DNA of 64,000 bases from Trichoplax adhaerens (GCF_000150275.1 NW_002060949.1:4577216-4641215); one strand, 5' to 3'. Positions 7,955-16,492 are shown, counted from the stretch's first letter. Translations and numbers: made by a program. The notes: generated by a model from the sequence alone, not told the origin.

Positions 7955-8384
7955 AAGTTGCTCTTTGCTTAAACAAGAACTCAAAAGAACTCTTCAAATT
8001 ATTTCCTAGTCTATGATAGGTTATTTTCAGGTGGATAAAAATATCAGATGTATATTATATTCAATTTACAATTAGAATAGATTACACTCGTATCCACAGG
8101 AGTATACACGGTAACAATGTACTGTATATGGTGGCTCTATCAAAGATTAGTATTTTCTTTAAGTTATATCAAAATATTTCTTAATATATATTTGACAGTG
8201 TTATAGGCTGTACATTTAGAGAAGACATTAAAATTCATTTGTGTATACAACATTAAACAATATAAACGATTTAGCAGTACTATAAGAGTTTAGTGTGTAC
8301 TGCATATATTAGCATGATATTCTTCTGCACAACAAGCTGATACAGCAACTGATTCAATCATTTTAATGTTGCCAATATTATCAG

Positions 8385-11300
8385 CTACTGAGCTGGAATT
8401 AAGGCGTATCTAAAGCTATCATATTGACGTACATCGACTATCCAAGACGAAAACTCTTCTTTAGCAAGGCATTCCTTTAAAACTGTGTCGTTCTATTAAC
8501 ATTTAAGAATTTCGATATATTCATTAGATTATAAATGCCTGATTTTGTTCTTAATCAAGAGTAGATAATTTTCTCAGCTATCAATTAAATAAAGTAATTA
8601 TACGTATATACGCACGATATTTCCTGTTTGTTGTGCCAGATGATTAAGACTTGTAGGATATTTAGGAGTGCTATTACGACGGAATAGTGATTCAACCTCT
8701 GAGAGTTTGATGCTACGCGTACAATTTAGATGAGAACGTACTGTTCTTTTATCTTCTATAAACATTTTAGCCATATTAAGCTAAACATGCAATAGGTAAT
8801 TAGTACAATTTATGCAAGCAGATTTTCTCGATAGAGTATAAATAGCAATTTTAAAGTACACCTACGCGCTCGAAAAATAGTTTTTCCTCTGCGGTATCCT
8901 ATTGTTGTAGCAAAAGCATGTATAAGTAATTACAATTTCTATGATATTGTTTCATAATTACAGCCATGTATCTGCATGATTACAACATTGGATTATGCTT
9001 TTTACGTTTTTTCGTTAGTAGTATATTATTAATATACTAGTACATTGAAAGAAATCAATATTATAGTTAGCTTTTAGGGATAAAATAGTGATCCTAACAT
9101 GATTCCTACCAAATTTGACTATACGTATTTTGAAAGATTGTAGATTAAAGATGTAATTATCTTTTCAATAACAATAAATTTTAGTTGACGAGATTACTAC
9201 TGATACGTCGTATAATTTTAAACGCAAATACCAAAATTTTACGGTTAAAGCGAGATGACAAGGCGGCAACAGTATAACAAAGATAAAATAAGGCCTAAGC
9301 AACCAATATATAATACTGTATTGTATAATCTTGAATTCAACAGTCTCATTAGCGTACTTACGTGAATAATTAGGCGGGTAACTTTCAAGATTTTGCTTCG
9401 CTTCGATGCATAAGCTTTCGTTATCACCTTTTGGTCATCATAGATGTAGTAATCCCAAAAAACTATTCTGTCAACTTCTGTGAGATTAATATCTTTATTT
9501 TGAATTTCTTCCAGAGGAATAAAAAGTACTGATTGACTGTGTATAAATACAGAGCAATAATTTATAATTACAAACGATGAAATTATGTTAAATTCTGCTA
9601 TGATTATTAATTGTACAGTATCTAGAGTTTGCATTTTAAATATTGAAGGCATTTAACTTATTAGAATGTAGCATGATAAAGTTGAAATAGTTGATGTAAT
9701 TGTACTCATGTAGGTAGTAAATCTTAGTAAATTTCGACTTTTACCCTTTATATAGCTTCATAGCATTTTCATTACTATTTTGCGTTGTTTTTTGCCCAAT
9801 TATTAAATACTGGTGTTTGTCTAGGCCATTTATCTTTGAGAGTATCATTTCAAAAATACTTAACACGTTATCATCTTGGAGACAAAAATTGTAAACAACG
9901 ACAATTTTTTCGGAAGATGATAAACATAACTGGATTAAACAGTCTAGAATCAAGTATTTACTACAAAGTCCGGCTATATCTGGACTTGTAGCTAATTGAT
10001 TATTTTGAACTTTTGGTGTTGAAGCAGTTAACCAGATAGAATATAAATTTCTGTACCATTTTTGAATATCTGCGTCAGCTGTAAAATTGAAACATCAAAG
10101 AATGTTCGTTTTTCAATTATAATGATCAGAAAATTTGAAATATAACTAGCTAAATATATTAATGAGATAGATAAGATTTGTATAGTTGTTAAACAGCCTG
10201 CATAGTGCCTTTATAATCATATATCTGCTTCGTGAATTCTAAGACAGGTTACTAATAAAAATCTTACTGGCTATACCTTCCTGTCCGGTAATTGAAGGAC
10301 GATTGAGAACATCATTGTACAGTTGTGTTTGTTCGTCATTTAATCTCAGAAACACTACATGCTCTATCTTTCGATGGATACGGTATTGCGTATCAGTTAC
10401 ACTATACACCTAAATTATGAAGACAATCATATAATGTTTAAATCCGTGTGCATAAAGTGCCAAAGCCTGAGAATGTATTTAGCGACGTTTGCTAAACCAA
10501 TCAACTAAGTATTGAGTAGATAGACAGACACCGTAAAATCTTACAATTTTTAAGTAGATATAATATAACCATAATACCTTAATAAAGTAATCTAGGAGAA
10601 GATCTTCTCTAGCATCGTTGGAATTATGAACTTTCAAGGCGTCAATTATGTTATTTTGCACGCGATGAATCGAATTATGTGTAGGATTGACAAGAGCAAC
10701 CATTGTACTAACTACAGTAAGAGAATAAGAAGCGGCAAATTATGATTTTCAAGATGATAAATTACAGATAATAAAACATTTGTAATTTCTGGTTCGATAT
10801 GAAATACTAGTAAAATAACAGTAATACTATTTACTAAACTGACAAGAACGCTTACACTTAGTAATATCATCGCCATAAATATCAGCCAAAAAAACTCGTT
10901 GTCGAGTGTTTACTTTTGAAACCAGATCAAAAATGGCCGTCCAACGTTGTTCTGGTAAGAAGTCGTCATCACATATTACAAGATCAGATCCTACATGCCA
11001 GTATCAAAATAAGTTTTACGAATGACGAACAAATTAATTATTAGCTCTTTACATTTACTTATTACCTGGTGATTGGAGGCAATTTTTCATCTCTTGTAAT
11101 TGCTGTGATTTTGAGTGAAGTAGCTCAGAATATGTATTATAACTTAGTAGAAGTACTCCTGAAATCTGCTTCCATTGCTTTATCGTTGCATAATTGTCTT
11201 TTTGGATCGTTGCATAATTGTCTTTTTTATCAGAATTTGGACGTAGATAGTACAACTATCAAGAATTTACTAATGTTAAGAATTGTACTTTCAAAAATCT

Positions 11301-14300
11301 TGATAAAATAAAGGAAAACGGGGAAAACATTATTCAAGTACCTTTAAGTCAGTCCAATCCCTTTTTCGACGCTTATATTCGTGAAACCATCTATTTAACT
11401 TCTTTTTCGAAGACAGTAAAAGACATTTTCCTTTGTAAGACGTTAGAAATGTTAAAGTCTAAGAAATAAAGATGTATAGAAAATTAGTATGTGTTTTTTG
11501 TTATTAAATTATATAATATCGTATTTGCGGATTAGTACAATATACCGGCAAGTATCTTCCCAATTCTTCTGGATAAATAAAGACACAACCTTGTTTCTTG
11601 TAAACGCAAGCATGGTATATGTCGATAACACATTCAGCTTGATAGCGACATAATTGAGTGGCTAAATTGGTTGGTATTGTATTCTCATCTGATAAGATAA
11701 TATTCGTAACATTATCTGAACTGTCATACAGCACCTTACTGGAAGCTTTCCGATCTAAATCCCTCTGTCGCCTTATAATTTGATTATCAAGAAATTTATG
11801 GGCACTATCAACTATCTTGTCCATTTGATCTACTGATTTAGCTCTTGAATCTGTCCTTTTACGTTTTCTAGTCGTGCTACCTATTGGCTTACATGGTGAG
11901 GAATTACGTCTGTGTACGATCTTTCCACCATTACCAGATGCAGTGACTGATGTTGATTGATTCTTCGTATCACTTTGGATCGGAGTAAATGATGATTTGA
12001 ATTTAAGATCAGATTTTACTGAGTTAATAGTAGGAGATAAGGATAACGAAAGTGGAGACTTGTTATTGGAAGAATTAATTTTATTAGACTTTGATGCGGG
12101 CTGTTCCATCACAGGTAGGGTCATATTTGATATGTTACTTTCCTTATTTAAACCTTGTAATGATGGCATTTTGTTTTTTAATGAAGCCTCATGATAGGAC
12201 CCTTTAGGTATTGTTTTATTCCGAGTATCGAAGATTGGATTATCAGTAAATATCGCTGAGGAGCCTGCGCCAGAGATATTACTTCTCTGATTTATATCTT
12301 GAGATTTTGATTGTTCTTGCGACGGCTTATTGCCAAATGATCCATTTGATGGAAATAATATGGAACCATTGGATAACAAATCATCATTGTCAAGTATAGT
12401 AAATAAGCTTATATTAGAAGTACTGTTGCCTTCATTTTTACATTGTGATTGCATTTGTTCAATTACCGATGAACCACTACTCGGCTTAAATTTGCAGCTA
12501 ATGGAAATCTCGTTCGATCTAATTACTTCGGGATCGCTATAACATAAAGCTGTGTTGGTTTGTATTCGCTTAGAAGAGGGCAACATCGATTTCTCTGTGG
12601 TGTGAGAACTTTCTAATAGCTCTCTGTGATATAATGTGAAACGTTCGTCATAATTATCATCGTCATCATCGTTGCTTTCATCAAATATAATTGACGAATC
12701 ATCATACTTTTCGCCTAATTTCTTTCTGTGTTTTTTACAAATATGGTACCTGTGATAAATATCCAGATGGTCTTTTGAACTATTATTTCGTTTCGTTAGA
12801 TATTGTCTTAATTCCTATATTGCCATGTAATTATATTCAGGAATATGTTCCGTTATTGACCAGAAAACGAAATAAAATCGGGTAACTCTATCCTTATTGT
12901 TACTCACATTGTATTCAGACAAAAACGACTGTTTTTCTGTACCATTATCTATATCTTGCAATTTTTCTGTACTATTATCTATATCTTGCAATTCGTCCTA
13001 AAGGTGTCGAAATTTTTATCCTATGTTAGTAATTAGAGCACAGAAAAGCCAATAAGTCTGATACTGACCATAACAAAGTCTGAAGTTCTATAAATATCTT
13101 GATCTTGACTAGTCAATTTTTGCATGATAATGTTATTATTGATTTCATCGCAGACAACTCCTATTGACACAATTCATATCCGAAAGTTAATTTATAAAAT
13201 GCGTTCTTCTGTTTTTGTGATAATTATAGTAGGATCGCGAATTGTACCTCGGTAAATCAATTCCTTGATGTATGATTCATCCAGGTTAGTTTTTGATGAC
13301 TGATCCCAAATACTTTTACCGAGTTGTAACAAGAAATTTCGATGTTCACAAACATTCACCGTTGAAAGGTCTTTAATTTCAAGATACCAGGCGTACAAGA
13401 GAAGAAGCACAACCTAAATTTTCAACAAAAAAAATGAGATTTGTACTCCGTTAGATATGCCATCTACAGATAATTGTAGAAGTCTAGTTAAAACAGTGAC
13501 TTGCTATAATAAGTACATCAGATTAATAGTAATTGCGATTTTTTAAATCAATCTAATTTCTGAAGTGATTAAAATATTCCAATTTATAAATTTAAAGTAA
13601 AATAGTGCACATAATATATCGACTAGATTACTAGTAGTTATAAATAGACTACACAGTCGTTGTCACTTAAGCAGATACTAACTTTAGCAATTTCCAACTC
13701 GTCATTTTCTAAGTTTGTCAATTTTATCACCCCTTCGAAAGATTGGTAAGTGAGATCTGTAAAAAAAGTAATATAGCTTCATTTTTAATTATGTAAACTT
13801 TTAGCAGTATAATTTGTGTAGTTATGATAACGTATCATTTAAGGTTATAAATATCGTGATTACCATATGATTAGAATTAATTTTATAATATCAACAAATA
13901 CTATCGTAGTGTAAGTTGGCGCTAAAACTTTTATTTTTTCTGATAGTAAAATTTGTGGTGGGTACAGAAATCAGTTATCAAAGGACGTGGTATATAGACA
14001 GGTAAATATCTTTCTTGAGCTGACTACATAGACAGTAATAATAAGCTAGCGATTACCTTTAAGCGTTATAGAATCGACCAGCGATACTATCATTTAGTAG
14101 CAAATAAATTTTGATTCAACAAAACTCTATATTATCAAACTAATCTACGGTGATGTTCTTTGTTGCATTTGAAAAGCATGAAGAGTTAAACAAGAATATT
14201 TACGGGCCTGTATTCTACTTGTGTACCTTCGAGATAATCTATAATTCTAGTAAATCGTGATCGAACCGGTAATTTTACTAACGATGCATAGTCTAGTCCA

Positions 14301-14624
14301 TCCTCTTCTTCGCTATCACTATGACGAACATTAAAGAAGTGAAATTACGATTAAAAAAGATTGACCTTTAAGCCATGTTACCAATGTATGATCTGATATG
14401 TGAACTGTAGTATTAATAAGCGTTGATTAATTAAATTTGTAAATGTGACTTTAAGGAAATATGGATAAATTTATTTCATAAACAATTATAAAAAAAATAT
14501 TAATTAAAAATATATGTTGATATATTTCTTACTGTAACAGTTTTTCAGCTACGAAACATAATCGCTCGCTATTGGCAAATTGACGAAACGACGTAACTCG
14601 ATCTTCATGATGGTAAGTGTTGAC
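8385..14624 (-). CDS. ATRX/ARIP4(RAD54L2)-clade SNF2-family protein with degenerate ATPase motifs (predicted pseudo-ATPase); long N-terminal low-complexity region; multi-exon, 5' end uncertain
   Basis: The spliced translation is collinear with the ATRX helicase region: LCRYQAECV..GCVFIYPEELGRYLP|TLTFL; IKQWKQISGVLLLSYNTY..CLQSPG|SDLVICDDDF; KIEHVVFLRLNDEQTQLY; CSKYLILDCLIQLCLSSSEKIVVV; DINLTEVDRIVFWD; DTAEEKLFFER; NDTVLKECL..WIVDVRQYDSF..*. Splice phases are consistent in the junctions checked and no premature stop was found. Confidence 0.82.
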
Positions 14625-16492
14625 CTTTAGGAAACAAAAGTACTCGTAAAGAGGCAATATTATTAATGAATGTAATTGTTCTTATTTGAAAATAATTTAA
14701 AAACAGCACAGGGGTAATAGATTAAATCGTAATGTGAATATCCCTTAACTAAAGGTGTCATTAATTTTTGAATTATAATCATAATAGTAATTATGATTTC
14801 TTGGAAAGTACGCAAAGGTATAGATTTACCTTACGTGCGTTTAGAAAAGCTGGTAATGATAATGGGTTTATGATCCAAATATTACAGTAGGACAATTATT
14901 CCATGCAACATCAACATTTTCGGCTTAACAATGTCTTCGGATACAAATGTATACCATAGTATAGTAAATAGCGTTTTTGTCATAATCGACTCTTTGCTAC
15001 ATTCGACTGCGTACTAGTATGTTAATGATGGAAAAGGCATGTAATACCGCAATAAATAAGTCCTATTTTTTACAGTAGATCTTGTGGCAGTACCTCAATT
15101 CATCTACGTATTAACCATACTACTATATTAGGTATCGTGTGTAAAATACTGTGCATTAAAAAGGCTTGGTATTGATACCGTGTAAATTATACAGTATGTT
15201 CTACTGCTGTCCTTACGCGTATGTGTCATATCTCGCCAAGAACAATAATTATTATTATTACATTATTAGTCATTTCTGCTATCAATTAATGATAGGCAAT
15301 TATGCGAATTATGTTATAGGAGTGCCTGAATTCAACATCTAATTAGCCATACTTACAGTATAACACTGTATAGCAAATTGAGAAAATTTCTAGGTTTCCT
15401 GTGTTTTCTAAGCTAATTCAAGCAAAACATAGCCGATAAAGTATAGAAAATATTTTTACTGTGGCACGGTGATTATAATGTGAGAGACGGCACAAATTAA
15501 GTTTATTATCCAGGTAAACCTTTAGACTTGAAGTAGGTTGATCACAAGATGATAGACTTGAAAGCTTGATACAAAATCGGTATCATATATACTGTATAGG
15601 CATTGCATATATACGATATATATAATATATACAGTATAAATGGCGCGATTGGATACATTGCCTACAATACTCGCGCCAGTATCACTCTAACCAGGGCATG
15701 ATGGTAGCTGGAAATGACGAGAACTGCTTACGAGTAGAACACTGTCATCATTAATTATTATCATTGAGTAGAGAGCAAACGTAGACTGATTTGTCCATAC
15801 CGACAGATGTGCATGCTTATAGGCGGGAATTTCCCTACAAACATTACACGTAGGGCATAGGAACCCTTACTAAGGCAGTAAAAGAAGAAAGCGGACACTT
15901 TCCAATAACTTCTTGCTATCGATTTGGATATTATTTGACAGTCGTAGCAAGAGAATATAGTCATGTTTAGCTTTGGCATCAAAAACTTGCGTCTGTCCAG
16001 GACAGGACATCTGCATTATGGCATCTATGGTACAGCTCTTGATGCAATAGCTCTTGATTAAGTTATTATGATTATTATTTTAAGAAGAAAGTGGCGTTTG
16101 GTAAATTTGTCGTTCTTGCTCGTTGACAATTCATTAATCTGTATGCTAATGGAATAGTAAATGAATATTTTATATTGGAAAGAAGGAAACTTACCCACTT
16201 GAGTAAATGCTTCTTCACTTGATGGTTCATACCTCCTTGAGTAAGTTAATCTTGAATGAAAAATGAAGCGTCAAGAAATACTAGGGTGATTTTTGTCATG
16301 AATTCTTCACTTCTTTTTGCATGTATTGATCAATCATAAGCATACTCAATCGTCATAAGATCTACAGGTTGGAATCGCTGATTGTCCTCTCCAATTTCCT
16401 TTATTCAGAACATCATGTCAATCTTTGTCCTGTATTATTTGATTGTTCAGAAACTGGACTGTCTTTGGTATTGACTGGTAGAAATTTGCAGA

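What the first reader, a model, noticed from the sequence alone, without database searches (positions are those of the whole stretch)
8385..14624. Intact but catalytically dead ATRX-like SNF2 protein (pseudo-remodeler)
Seen: an open multi-exon gene collinear with the whole ATRX helicase region, including the ATRX/ARIP4-type stretches 'W....GVLLLSY..Y...L..PG.D.VICD' and C-terminal 'DTVL..L...WIV....YDS'. Every ATP-handling motif is changed: Walker A GCILAHCMGLGKT -> GCVFIYPEELGRY (~11546-11592); Walker B DEGH -> DDDF (~10959-10970); motif III TGTP -> ADIY; motif V STKAGSLGINL -> PLEEIQNKDINL; motif VI Q..RVYR.GQ -> KVITKAYASKR (arginine fingers lost, ~9395-9430). No ADD/PHD finger was seen upstream. 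Instead there is a long S/N/K-rich region with an NLS-like RKRKR. Established: dead SNF2 folds exist (Drosophila SUUR, yeast Hda2/Hda3) and act as scaffolds. Inference: an independently evolved ATRX-derived chromatin scaffold or dominant-negative regulator; I do not know of a described one in this clade.
Basis: partly seen in the sequence, partly recalled or inferred. Interest (0 to 1): 0.85.

Follow-up and report, generated by a model that had tools for sequence, protein, structure and literature searches.

The report
Dead ATRX copy with NuMA hook
Trichoplax keeps and expresses a copy of the chromatin remodeler gene ATRX that has lost every ATP-handling motif and has a NuMA-type hook domain in place of the usual histone-reading ADD domain, so it most likely works as a non-enzymatic nuclear adaptor.

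Summary

- **Expressed:** RNA contigs from four studies show 15 GT..AG introns and one open frame.
- **ATRX-like:** residues 591-1144 match the ATRX helicase core (BLASTP against Trichoplax ATRX 2e-16 and 2e-5; hhalign 98%).
- **Motifs lost:** I GLGKT>ELGRY, II DEGH>DDDF, III TGTP>ADIY; V and both motif VI arginines are gone. Only 52 of 170 ATRX-invariant columns survive.
- **Parent gene:** its ten introns match canonical ATRX in order and phase. The intact ARIP4-like paralogs differ. This points to DNA-level duplication of an ATRX-type gene.
- **Canonical ATRX:** present elsewhere, with ADD-like region and GLGKT.
- **Selection:** a second placozoan keeps the frame and the pseudo-motifs (DLVICDDDF identical); dN/dS is about 0.27, so it is not a pseudogene.

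Public records name it automatically as "ATRX-like" and as a NuMA hook protein, and no paper was found. Loss of ATPase activity and the adaptor role are inferred, not tested.

The parts
8385..16230 (-). Whole coding region of TRIADDRAFT_58308: 18 exons, 3435 nt CDS, 1144 aa. ATG at 16230, stop at 8385-8387.
   Evidence: 15 splice joints seen in RNA contigs of 4 runs from 4 studies, all GT..AG once the tool's stated cut shifts are applied. A 16th intron (14319-14532, GT..AG) is inferred from a loose end of the contigs. The open frame was rebuilt. It has the same length and exon structure as Trichoplax sp. H2 protein P0133, and differs from it at 10 residues. Exon 1 and intron 1 rest on the public models P0001 and P0133 only.
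16195..16230 (-). Exon 1 (aa 1-12, MNHQVKKHLLKW), followed by a GTAAGT donor.
   Evidence: Found by matching P0001 to the window. It lies outside the stretch on which reads were laid. The X6 and X9 contigs run about 255 nt past 14318, further than the 92-nt exon 2.
13372..14624 (-). Exons 2-5 (14533-14624, 14227-14318, 13683-13756, 13248-13413). With exon 1 they encode the NuMA-type hook domain, aa 7-112.
   Evidence: Pfam PF21670 HOOK_N_NuMA: E=7.7e-11, 42.4 bits, above the cut-off of 27; E=4.7e-11 for P0133. phmmer hit to human NuMA hook structure 6qja, E=0.005. Atlas look-alikes are HOOK-domain clusters at 0.85, a lead only.
12587..13371 (-). aa 113-290: acidic, predicted helical region (net charge -15). 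Includes exons 6-7 (13069-13160, 12908-12997) and the acidic run NDDDDDNYDE at 12644-12673.
   Evidence: Composition. Low-confidence helices in the AF2 models. Coordinates.
11687..12586 (-). aa 291-590: S/N/K-rich low-complexity region inside the 1269-nt exon 8 (11546-12814). The basic NLS-like TRKRKRT lies at 11852-11872.
   Evidence: Composition: S 57, N 28, K 27 of 300 residues; pI 9.7. pLDDT below 35. 34-37% identity to the L038 orthologue, which keeps a basic KKSRRT at the same place.
8388..11686 (-). aa 591-1144: ATRX-type SNF2 core (both RecA-like lobes plus the ATRX/ARIP4-type C-terminal extension). Covers the 3' end of exon 8 and exons 9-18: 11342-11458, 11066-11255, 10856-10990, 10578-10711, 10277-10409, 9745-10078, 9362-9536, 8866-8898, 8616-8780, 8385-8492.
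   Evidence: BLASTP against Trichoplax ATRX, E=2e-16 and 2e-5. hhalign 98%. AF2 with an ATRX alignment gives pLDDT mostly 70-93 over aa 590-1045. Foldseek top hits are all SNF2 motors. Atlas feature hits are SNF2+Helicase_C clusters at 0.96.
11552..11590 (-). Degenerate motif I (Walker A): GCVFIYPEELGRY, where ATRX has GCIlAHxMGLGKT.
   Evidence: Alignment, coordinates. The L038 orthologue has GCIFIYPQQLGRT.
10959..10985 (-). Degenerate motif II (Walker B): DLVICDDDF, where ATRX has D.V.CDEGH.
   Evidence: The sequence is identical in the L038 orthologue.
10866..10892 (-). Degenerate motif III: FLADIYGDD, where ATRX has vLTGTPLQNN.
   Evidence: This block is not conserved in L038, which has FFTNLDCNH.
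9392..9523 (-). Degenerate motifs V and VI. FIPLEEIQNKDINL replaces ATRX FLISTxAGgLGINL, and KVITKAYASKRSK replaces ATRX QxIfRxYRFGQxK. Both motif VI arginines are replaced.
   Evidence: This exon is 68% identical to L038, with dN/dS 0.15, making it one of the two most conserved blocks of the gene.
11181..11225 (-). Tandem KDNYATIQ repeat. It carries an in-frame 24-nt presence/absence polymorphism among strains.
   Evidence: 24 letters are left out at 11182 in the X6 and X9 contigs. Repeat coordinates.

Best explanation
This is a real, single-copy, expressed placozoan gene: TRIADDRAFT_58308 in T. adhaerens and RDD44780.1 in Trichoplax sp. H2.

Origin. It arose by DNA-level duplication of an ATRX-type gene. 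The copy kept the two-lobed SNF2 ATPase fold and the ATRX/ARIP4-type C-terminal extension. It lost every motif needed to bind and hydrolyse ATP. It has no ADD histone-reading domain. Its N-terminus is a NuMA-type hook domain, followed by an acidic helical stretch and a basic, serine-rich linker with an NLS-like motif.

Likely function (inferred). It cannot translocate on DNA. It acts as a non-catalytic nuclear adaptor. The dead remodeler core would serve as a static binding module for DNA, nucleosomes or former ATRX partners, as the ATP-motif-less SNF2-like domains of yeast Hda2/Hda3 do. The hook domain would bind a second partner, the obvious candidate being the conserved C-terminal helix of dynein light intermediate chain.

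Shown: gene structure, expression, homology, motif loss, conservation, purifying selection.
Inferred: loss of ATPase activity, nuclear location, binding roles.
For: Expression and structure: spliced RNA contigs in 4 runs from 4 studies show 15 GT..AG introns and one open frame. The H2 protein model has the same length and structure.

Homology:
- BLASTP against Trichoplax ATRX (P0003): E=2e-16 and 2e-5, collinear.
- hhalign against the ATRX alignment A2: 98% probability, E=2.8e-13, 480 columns.
- Language-model look-alikes are all SNF2+Helicase_C, score 0.96.
- The AF2 model is confident over aa 590-1045 and matches only SNF2 motors in the PDB.

Motif loss: motifs I, II, III, V and VI are replaced in register. 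Only 52 of 170 ATRX-invariant columns are kept. Pfam no longer recognises SNF2 or Helicase_C.

ATRX parentage:
- Its ten introns have the same order and phases (0,0,1,1,0,1,2,0,0,0) as canonical ATRX, including a shared 33-nt micro-exon.
- The intact ARIP4-like paralogues read through at least 6 of these sites.
- A tree places the gene inside the ATRX+ARIP4-like clade with support 96/99.

Selection:
- The L038 orthologue is collinear exon by exon and keeps QGC[VI]FIYP..LGR and DLVICDDDF.
- dN/dS is 0.27 in the core and 0.15 in the V-VI block.
- H1 and H2 differ at 1 of 554 core residues, against 6 of 300 in the linker.

Hook domain: Pfam E=7.7e-11, above the cut-off.

Precedents: Hda2/Hda3 have SNF2-like domains without ATP motifs that bind DNA and scaffold a complex (PMC7793584). 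The NuMA hook binds dynein LIC (PMC11812572). Trichoplax LIC keeps the EGVLANFFSSLLNKK helix.
Against: - No biochemical test was possible. Motif loss predicts loss of ATPase activity but does not prove it. SUUR was also predicted to be inactive, yet it hydrolyses ATP.
- The SNF2 DNA-contact motifs Ia, IV and V are also degenerate, so DNA binding by the core is not assured.
- Strain polymorphism is rich in amino-acid changes: 14 non-synonymous against 5 synonymous, pN/pS about 0.73, from small numbers.
- The AF2 model used an alignment of ATRX proteins, so the fold match is not independent. The single-sequence model failed, with pLDDT 35.
- The hook domain could not be checked in the second species, because the L038 contig starts at aa 215.
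- Only two lineages are available.
Confidence: 0.6

Rival explanations
1. Competitive (dominant-negative) regulator. The dead core still occupies ATRX or ARIP4 binding sites or partners without remodelling, and so damps the activity of the canonical enzymes.
For: It derives from an ATRX-type gene and keeps the family-specific blocks and C-terminal extension. The canonical ATRX and two intact ARIP4-like genes coexist in the genome. The most conserved block is the former motif V-VI region of lobe 2.
Against: Only 31% of ATRX-invariant columns are kept, and the branch to this gene is saturated, so shared binding surfaces are doubtful. It has no ADD domain to target the same chromatin marks. The hook domain suggests a function of its own.
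Confidence: 0.15
2. It is not dead. The core keeps nucleotide binding or an atypical, partner-stimulated ATPase, as was found for Drosophila SUUR.
For: SUUR was thought to be inactive but hydrolyses ATP, and its partner stimulates this (PMC9917439). Remnants persist and are conserved between species: G-R-[YT] in motif I and an acidic DDD in motif II.
Against: Motif I has Lys>Arg, acidic EE (QQ in L038) in place of the ATRX M-G, and Tyr for Thr in T. adhaerens. Motif II has lost the Glu and His of DEGH. Motif III is gone. Both motif VI arginines are replaced in both species. My own knowledge, not checked here: the Lys>Arg change alone is the standard ATPase-dead mutation in SNF2 enzymes.
Confidence: 0.07
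3. A transcribed relic under relaxed constraint, on its way to becoming a pseudogene, with no maintained function.
For: High pN/pS among strains, about 0.73. Extreme divergence from ATRX. An in-frame indel polymorphism. Pfam cannot recognise the core.
Against: The 1144-codon frame is open in an AT-rich genome. All observed splice sites are canonical. The orthologue at dS about 1.2 shows no stop or frameshift in the aligned coding blocks and keeps GT and AG sites at the equivalent junctions. dN/dS is 0.27 overall in the core and 0.15 in the V-VI block. The core is the least variable part between H1 and H2.
Confidence: 0.08

Closest known systems
ATRX (canonical; Trichoplax TRIADDRAFT_25002, P0003; orthologues P0016, P0062 and others)
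   Same: Collinear SNF2 core over both lobes, the pre-core basic region and the C-terminal extension. Ten introns have the same positions and phases. Family-specific blocks are kept: W..GV(L/M)..SY and PG.D.VICD.
   Different: All ATP motifs are replaced. Only 52 of 170 invariant columns are kept. There is no ADD (GATA-like plus PHD) domain; a NuMA-type hook sits at the N-terminus instead. The large insert between the lobes is much shorter: the exon is 334 nt against 658 nt.
ARIP4/RAD54L2-like paralogues of Trichoplax (tandem pair on contig C1411, loci L033 and L034). The ARIP4 name is my recollection, not a test against a named ARIP4.
   Same: Same ATRX+ARIP4-like clade, support 96/99. They give the best exon-level tblastn matches to the W..GVLLLSY and PG.DLVICD blocks. 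They share the C-terminal EHESLL-type motif.
   Different: They are catalytically intact: GLGKT, DEGH, LTGYPIQNN, RIYRYGQ. Their intron positions differ from those shared by ATRX and this gene.
Yeast Hda2/Hda3 (non-catalytic SNF2-like domains)
   Same: An SNF2-type helicase fold without an ATP-binding motif, used for DNA binding and as a scaffold of a chromatin complex (PMC7793584). This is the closest functional analogy.
   Different: Hda2/Hda3 resemble only the second lobe plus the SNF2-specific helical subdomain, and are followed by coiled coils. They are fungal and are not derived from ATRX. Here both lobes are kept.
Drosophila SUUR
   Same: An SNF2-related protein with a divergent helicase domain, long assumed to be inactive, that acts on chromatin without sliding nucleosomes.
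   Different: Recombinant SUUR does hydrolyse ATP (PMC9917439), so it is not a clean pseudoenzyme. Its domain context is also different.
NuMA (NUMA1; hook structure 6qja)
   Same: An N-terminal hook domain of the NuMA type, above the Pfam threshold. Both have a basic NLS-like element.
   Different: No Pfam domain other than the hook was recognised, and the C-terminus is the SNF2-like core. Only about 170 helical residues follow the hook, at low confidence. NuMA's long coiled coil is described in PMC11812572. Its LGN- and microtubule-binding C-terminal modules were not specifically searched for here.

Membership tests
SNF2 family ATPases (Pfam SNF2-rel_dom PF00176 + Helicase_C PF00271) | Two RecA-like lobes collinear with the SNF2 core (homology) | tested here: met
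   BLASTP E=2e-16 and 2e-5 against ATRX. hhalign 98%, 480 columns. Foldseek hits are all SNF2 motors, on a model built from an ATRX alignment.
SNF2 family ATPases (Pfam SNF2-rel_dom PF00176 + Helicase_C PF00271) | Scores above the Pfam gathering thresholds | tested here: not met
   PF00176 scores E=3.6 and 7 bits, against a cut-off of 24.9. There is no Helicase_C hit. The gene is not found in the genome-wide PF00176 scan.
SNF2 family ATPases (Pfam SNF2-rel_dom PF00176 + Helicase_C PF00271) | Walker A GxGKT, Walker B DExH, motif III, motif V, motif VI arginines | tested here: not met
   ELGRY, DDDF, ADIY, PLEEIQNKDINL and TKAYASKR stand in register with the ATRX consensus. The same losses are seen in the L038 orthologue.
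SNF2 family ATPases (Pfam SNF2-rel_dom PF00176 + Helicase_C PF00271) | DNA-stimulated ATP hydrolysis | not testable with these tools
   This needs recombinant protein.
ATRX subfamily | N-terminal ADD domain (GATA-like plus PHD fingers) | tested here: not met
   No such Pfam hit and no Cys-rich region. The canonical Trichoplax ATRX locus L036 does have an ADD-like Cys-rich region, with only a weak, sub-threshold match to DNMT3_ADD_GATA1-like (E=0.0073, 16.9 bits against a cut-off of 27).
ATRX subfamily | Descent from the ATRX gene (shared gene structure, clade membership) | tested here: met
   All 10 intron positions and phases are shared with Trichoplax ATRX and not with the ARIP4-like paralogues. 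The gene lies inside the ATRX+ARIP4-like clade, support 96/99, but its position within that clade is unresolved.
NuMA | N-terminal NuMA-type hook domain | tested here: met
   PF21670 scores E=7.7e-11 and 42.4 bits, above the cut-off of 27. phmmer hit to 6qja, E=0.005.
NuMA | Long central coiled coil and C-terminal LGN- and microtubule-binding region | tested here: not met
   About 170 helical residues (low confidence) are followed by a disordered linker and then the SNF2-like core. Pfam recognises no domain other than the hook. No specific search for NuMA C-terminal motifs was run.
NuMA | Hook domain binds dynein light intermediate chain | tested here: inconclusive
   The complex prediction of the hook (aa 1-165) with the Trichoplax LIC C-terminal exon gave no verdict. 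This is evidence neither for nor against binding.
Processed or decaying pseudogene | Disrupted frame, no introns or no transcripts, dN/dS near 1 | tested here: not met
   The frame is open over 1144 codons. There are 17 introns, 15 seen directly in RNA contigs. dN/dS is 0.27-0.29.

The most novel reading that the evidence does not exclude
The protein is a chromatin-to-dynein tether built on a dead remodeler. The ATRX-derived core holds chromatin or DNA, and the NuMA-type hook recruits dynein through the conserved LIC helix. Placozoans would then have a NuMA-like nuclear or mitotic organiser of independent origin, possibly standing in for part of NuMA's role. No second NuMA-type hook was detected in this genome, but that search worked exon by exon and has little power.
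Probability: 0.1. Interest if true: 0.8.

Novelty: new variant of a known kind. Interest (0 to 1): 0.55.

Why it matters
Non-catalytic relatives of enzymes are a recognised way to make scaffolds and regulators. Well-supported cases in the SNF2 remodeler family are few: Hda2/Hda3 keep one lobe, and SUUR turned out to be active.

Here a full two-lobe ATRX core has lost all ATP motifs. It has nevertheless stayed open, spliced and constrained across a placozoan split with synonymous divergence near saturation. Its N-terminus is a hook domain otherwise typical of the spindle protein NuMA.

The gene is a natural experiment on what an ATRX core can do without its motor. It shows which surfaces stay conserved: the former motif V-VI face, the PG.DLVICD strand and the short block just after motif VI. 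It also poses a concrete, testable question about a link between chromatin and dynein in an early-branching animal.

The family was seen only in placozoans, so the broader impact depends on what the protein turns out to bind.

Tried and rejected
- **Exon-by-exon Pfam scan:** one weak SNF2 hit only (E=0.015). Uninformative.
- **Genome-wide PF00176 scan:** does not pick up this gene.
- **tblastn of the model against genomic loci of SNF2 paralogues:** only E of about 0.002 to the ARIP4-like pair and nothing to ATRX. ATRX exons are short, so this was misleading. Spliced proteins were needed.
- **MAFFT of P0001 with L038 exon fragments (A1):** fragments were stretched and misaligned. Discarded.
- **Single-sequence AlphaFold2:** pLDDT 35, unusable.
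- **Complex prediction of the hook (aa 1-165 of P0133) with the Trichoplax dynein LIC C-terminal exon:** no verdict. Not evidence either way.
- **The search for homologous proteins with the core of P0001:** only the protein itself.
- **Representative search with exon 8:** only the protein itself and P0002.
- **Metagenome scan with P0133:** nothing.
- **Search for a second NuMA-type hook in the genome:** nothing convincing. An exon-split domain gives this search low power.
- **Earlier findings of the scan:** nothing on this gene.
- **Literature:** no paper on TRIADDRAFT_58308 or on ATRX in Trichoplax.
- **Pseudogene reading:** rejected on frame, splicing and dN/dS.

The joined spliced model was never typed into a search tool. 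Whole-protein searches used the public records P0001 and P0133, returned by the tools. Exons were searched by reference. The joined model was used only inside scripts.

Full report
**What and where.** The window is contig C1408:4577216-4641215 of a 105.6-Mb, AT-rich genome. Database names identify the organism as Trichoplax adhaerens. The finding lies on the minus strand.

**Expression and gene model.**
- I laid RNA contigs from four runs, belonging to four studies, on 8380-14379. They show 15 splice joints.
- All 15 are GT..AG on the minus strand once the tool's stated cut shifts are applied.
- A loose end of the contigs matches 14533-14562. This defines a 16th GT..AG intron and shows that 14533-14624 is exon 2.
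- The spliced frame is open. Its first exon (16195-16230, with the ATG at 16230) comes from the public model and was located in the window.
- The full CDS has 18 exons, 3435 nt and 1144 codons.
- The NCBI model for T. adhaerens (P0001 = XP_002114462.1, 1096 aa) has a mis-spliced 3' end.
- The Trichoplax sp. H2 model (P0133 = RDD44780.1, 1144 aa) has exactly my RNA-supported structure.
- The gene is single copy.

**Is it SNF2/ATRX-like?**
- Pfam does not see it. SNF2-rel_dom scores E=3.6 and there is no Helicase_C hit.
- Against the canonical Trichoplax ATRX helicase region, BLASTP gives two collinear HSPs, E=2e-16 (aa 598-866) and E=2e-5 (aa 901-1083). That reference is P0003 = TRIADDRAFT_25002, whose best database matches are all ATRX.
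- hhalign against a 10-species ATRX alignment gives 98% probability, E=2.8e-13, over 480 columns covering both lobes.
- A language-model look-alike search returns only SNF2+Helicase_C clusters, at 0.96.
- AlphaFold2 failed without an alignment, with pLDDT 35.
- With an alignment of ATRX proteins it gives pLDDT mostly 70-93 over aa 590-1045. Foldseek then finds only SNF2 motors: CSB, ISW1, INO80, ALC1 and Rad54 (1z3i). This fold match is not independent of the alignment.

**Motif loss.** In register with the ATRX consensus (coordinates):

| Motif | ATRX | This protein |
|---|---|---|
| I | GCIlAHxMGLGKT | GCVFIYPEELGRY |
| Ia | PxNTxLNW | SSKKKLNRW |
| II | DEGH | DDDF |
| III | LTGTPLQNN | LADIYGDD |
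| V | FLISTxAGgLGINL | FIPLEEIQNKDINL |
| VI | QxIfRxYRFGQ | KVITKAYASKR |

- Both motif VI arginines are lost.
- Only 52 of 170 columns invariant among ten ATRX proteins are retained.

**Which parent?**
- The genome has a canonical ATRX on C1410. It has an ADD-like Cys-rich N-terminus and GLGKT.
- It also has a tandem pair of catalytically intact ARIP4-like genes on C1411, with GLGKT, DEGH, LTGYPIQNN and RIYRYGQ.
- A tree puts the dead protein and its orthologue inside the ATRX+ARIP4-like clade (support 96/99). The stem branch is saturated and the position within the clade is unresolved.
- Gene structure resolves the question. The ten introns in the SNF2-like part have the same order and phases (0,0,1,1,0,1,2,0,0,0) as the ten introns of the Trichoplax ATRX helicase region.
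- Five of these coincide exactly in the MAFFT alignment. Three more are exact in the BLASTP register. Two lie within 1-3 residues, in variable segments. Both genes share a 33-nt micro-exon.
- The ARIP4-like genes read straight through at least six of these sites and have introns elsewhere.
- The simplest reading is DNA-level duplication of an ATRX-type gene.

**Is it maintained?**
- A 4.1-kb contig from another placozoan (L038, carrying P0002) holds the orthologue. It is collinear exon by exon from aa 215 to 1056, with GT and AG sites at the equivalent junctions.
- Identity is 34-37% in the low-complexity linker, 42-59% across the core exons and 68% in the former motif V-VI exon.
- The pseudo-motifs are themselves conserved: QGC[VI]FIYP..LGR, and DLVICDDDF is identical.
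- Nei-Gojobori dN/dS is 0.29 overall, 0.27 in the core and 0.15 in the V-VI block. dS is about 1.2, near saturation, so these ratios are if anything overestimates.
- Between T. adhaerens and H2, 1 of 554 core residues differs, against 6 of 300 in the linker.
- Against strong constraint, strain SNPs in the RNA contigs are 14 non-synonymous to 5 synonymous, pN/pS about 0.73, from small numbers.
- Canonical ATRX's own N-terminal exon is only 42-61% identical to that of another placozoan. The overall divergence of this gene is therefore not extraordinary for this phylum.

- Residues 7-112 are a NuMA-type hook domain. Pfam PF21670 scores E=7.7e-11, above its threshold. phmmer against the human NuMA hook 6qja gives E=0.005. 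HOOK clusters appear as weak look-alikes.
- Then come an acidic helical stretch (aa 113-290, net charge -15) and a basic S/N/K-rich linker (aa 291-590). The linker holds TRKRKRT, which is conserved as a basic patch in L038.
- Trichoplax LIC keeps the EGVLANFFSSLLNKK helix.
- A complex prediction gave no verdict.

**Mechanism.**
- Shown: an expressed, constrained ATRX duplicate without ATP motifs, without an ADD domain, and with a hook domain.
- Inferred: it cannot hydrolyse ATP, it is nuclear, and it acts as an adaptor. The dead core would be a static binding module, by analogy with Hda2/Hda3 (PMC7793584). The hook would recruit a second partner.
- Rivals: a competitive inhibitor of ATRX or ARIP4; residual or atypical ATPase activity, for which SUUR is a warning (PMC9917439); or a decaying relic, which is disfavoured.

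**Novelty.**
- No paper was found.
- Public records carry only automatic names: 'ATRX-like protein' in H2, and 'NuMA N-terminal hook domain-containing protein' in UniProt B3S1J1.
- The family was seen only in placozoans at the sensitivity available. Animal proteomes could not be searched with a profile, so an older origin is not excluded.

**Method note.** Whole-protein searches used the public protein ids P0001 and P0133, and exons were searched by reference. The joined model was built only inside scripts and was not typed into any search tool.

Noticed in passing
L033 and L034 (G000:C1411:1641000-1660999): Two nearly identical, tandemly duplicated, catalytically intact ARIP4-like SNF2 genes lie about 10.3 kb apart. 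Their terminal branches in the tree are 0.007 and 0.035. They have GLGKT, DEGH, LTGYPIQNN, RIYRYGQ and a C-terminal EHESLL. The duplication looks recent.
   Followed up: partly
window 11181-11225: An in-frame 24-nt presence/absence polymorphism removes one copy of the KDNYATIQ tandem repeat. It is absent in the contigs of runs X6 and X9, and present in the window and in X5 and X10.
   Followed up: partly
window 8385-8900: The public T. adhaerens model XP_002114462.1 (P0001) skips the 33-nt micro-exon 8866-8898 and mis-splices the last exons. The RNA contigs and the Trichoplax sp. H2 model agree on a 1144-aa product.
   Followed up: yes
window 8963-9310 and 13811-14256: Low-depth contigs (depth 3-4, against 23-37 for the spliced contigs) lie inside introns. 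They are probably unspliced pre-mRNA or traces of genomic DNA in the libraries.
   Followed up: no
L036 (G000:C1410:4322000-4331999): The canonical Trichoplax ATRX locus has an ADD-like Cys-rich N-terminal exon of 745 codons, but the public protein TRIADDRAFT_25002 (807 aa) starts downstream of it. The public ATRX model therefore appears to be truncated at its N-terminus.
   Followed up: partly
P0001 aa 590-1060 (window 8616-11689): The nearest ESM Atlas clusters by language-model features are SNF2 helicases of giant viruses (Nucleocytoviricota). This probably reflects shared AT-rich composition rather than kinship.
   Followed up: no
L046:1360-1653 (G000:C1414, minus strand): The C-terminal exon of Trichoplax dynein light intermediate chain carries EGVLANFFSSLLNKK, which I take to be the adaptor-binding helix 1. 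Its near-identity to the human LIC1 helix is from my memory and was not checked against a human sequence here.
   Followed up: partly
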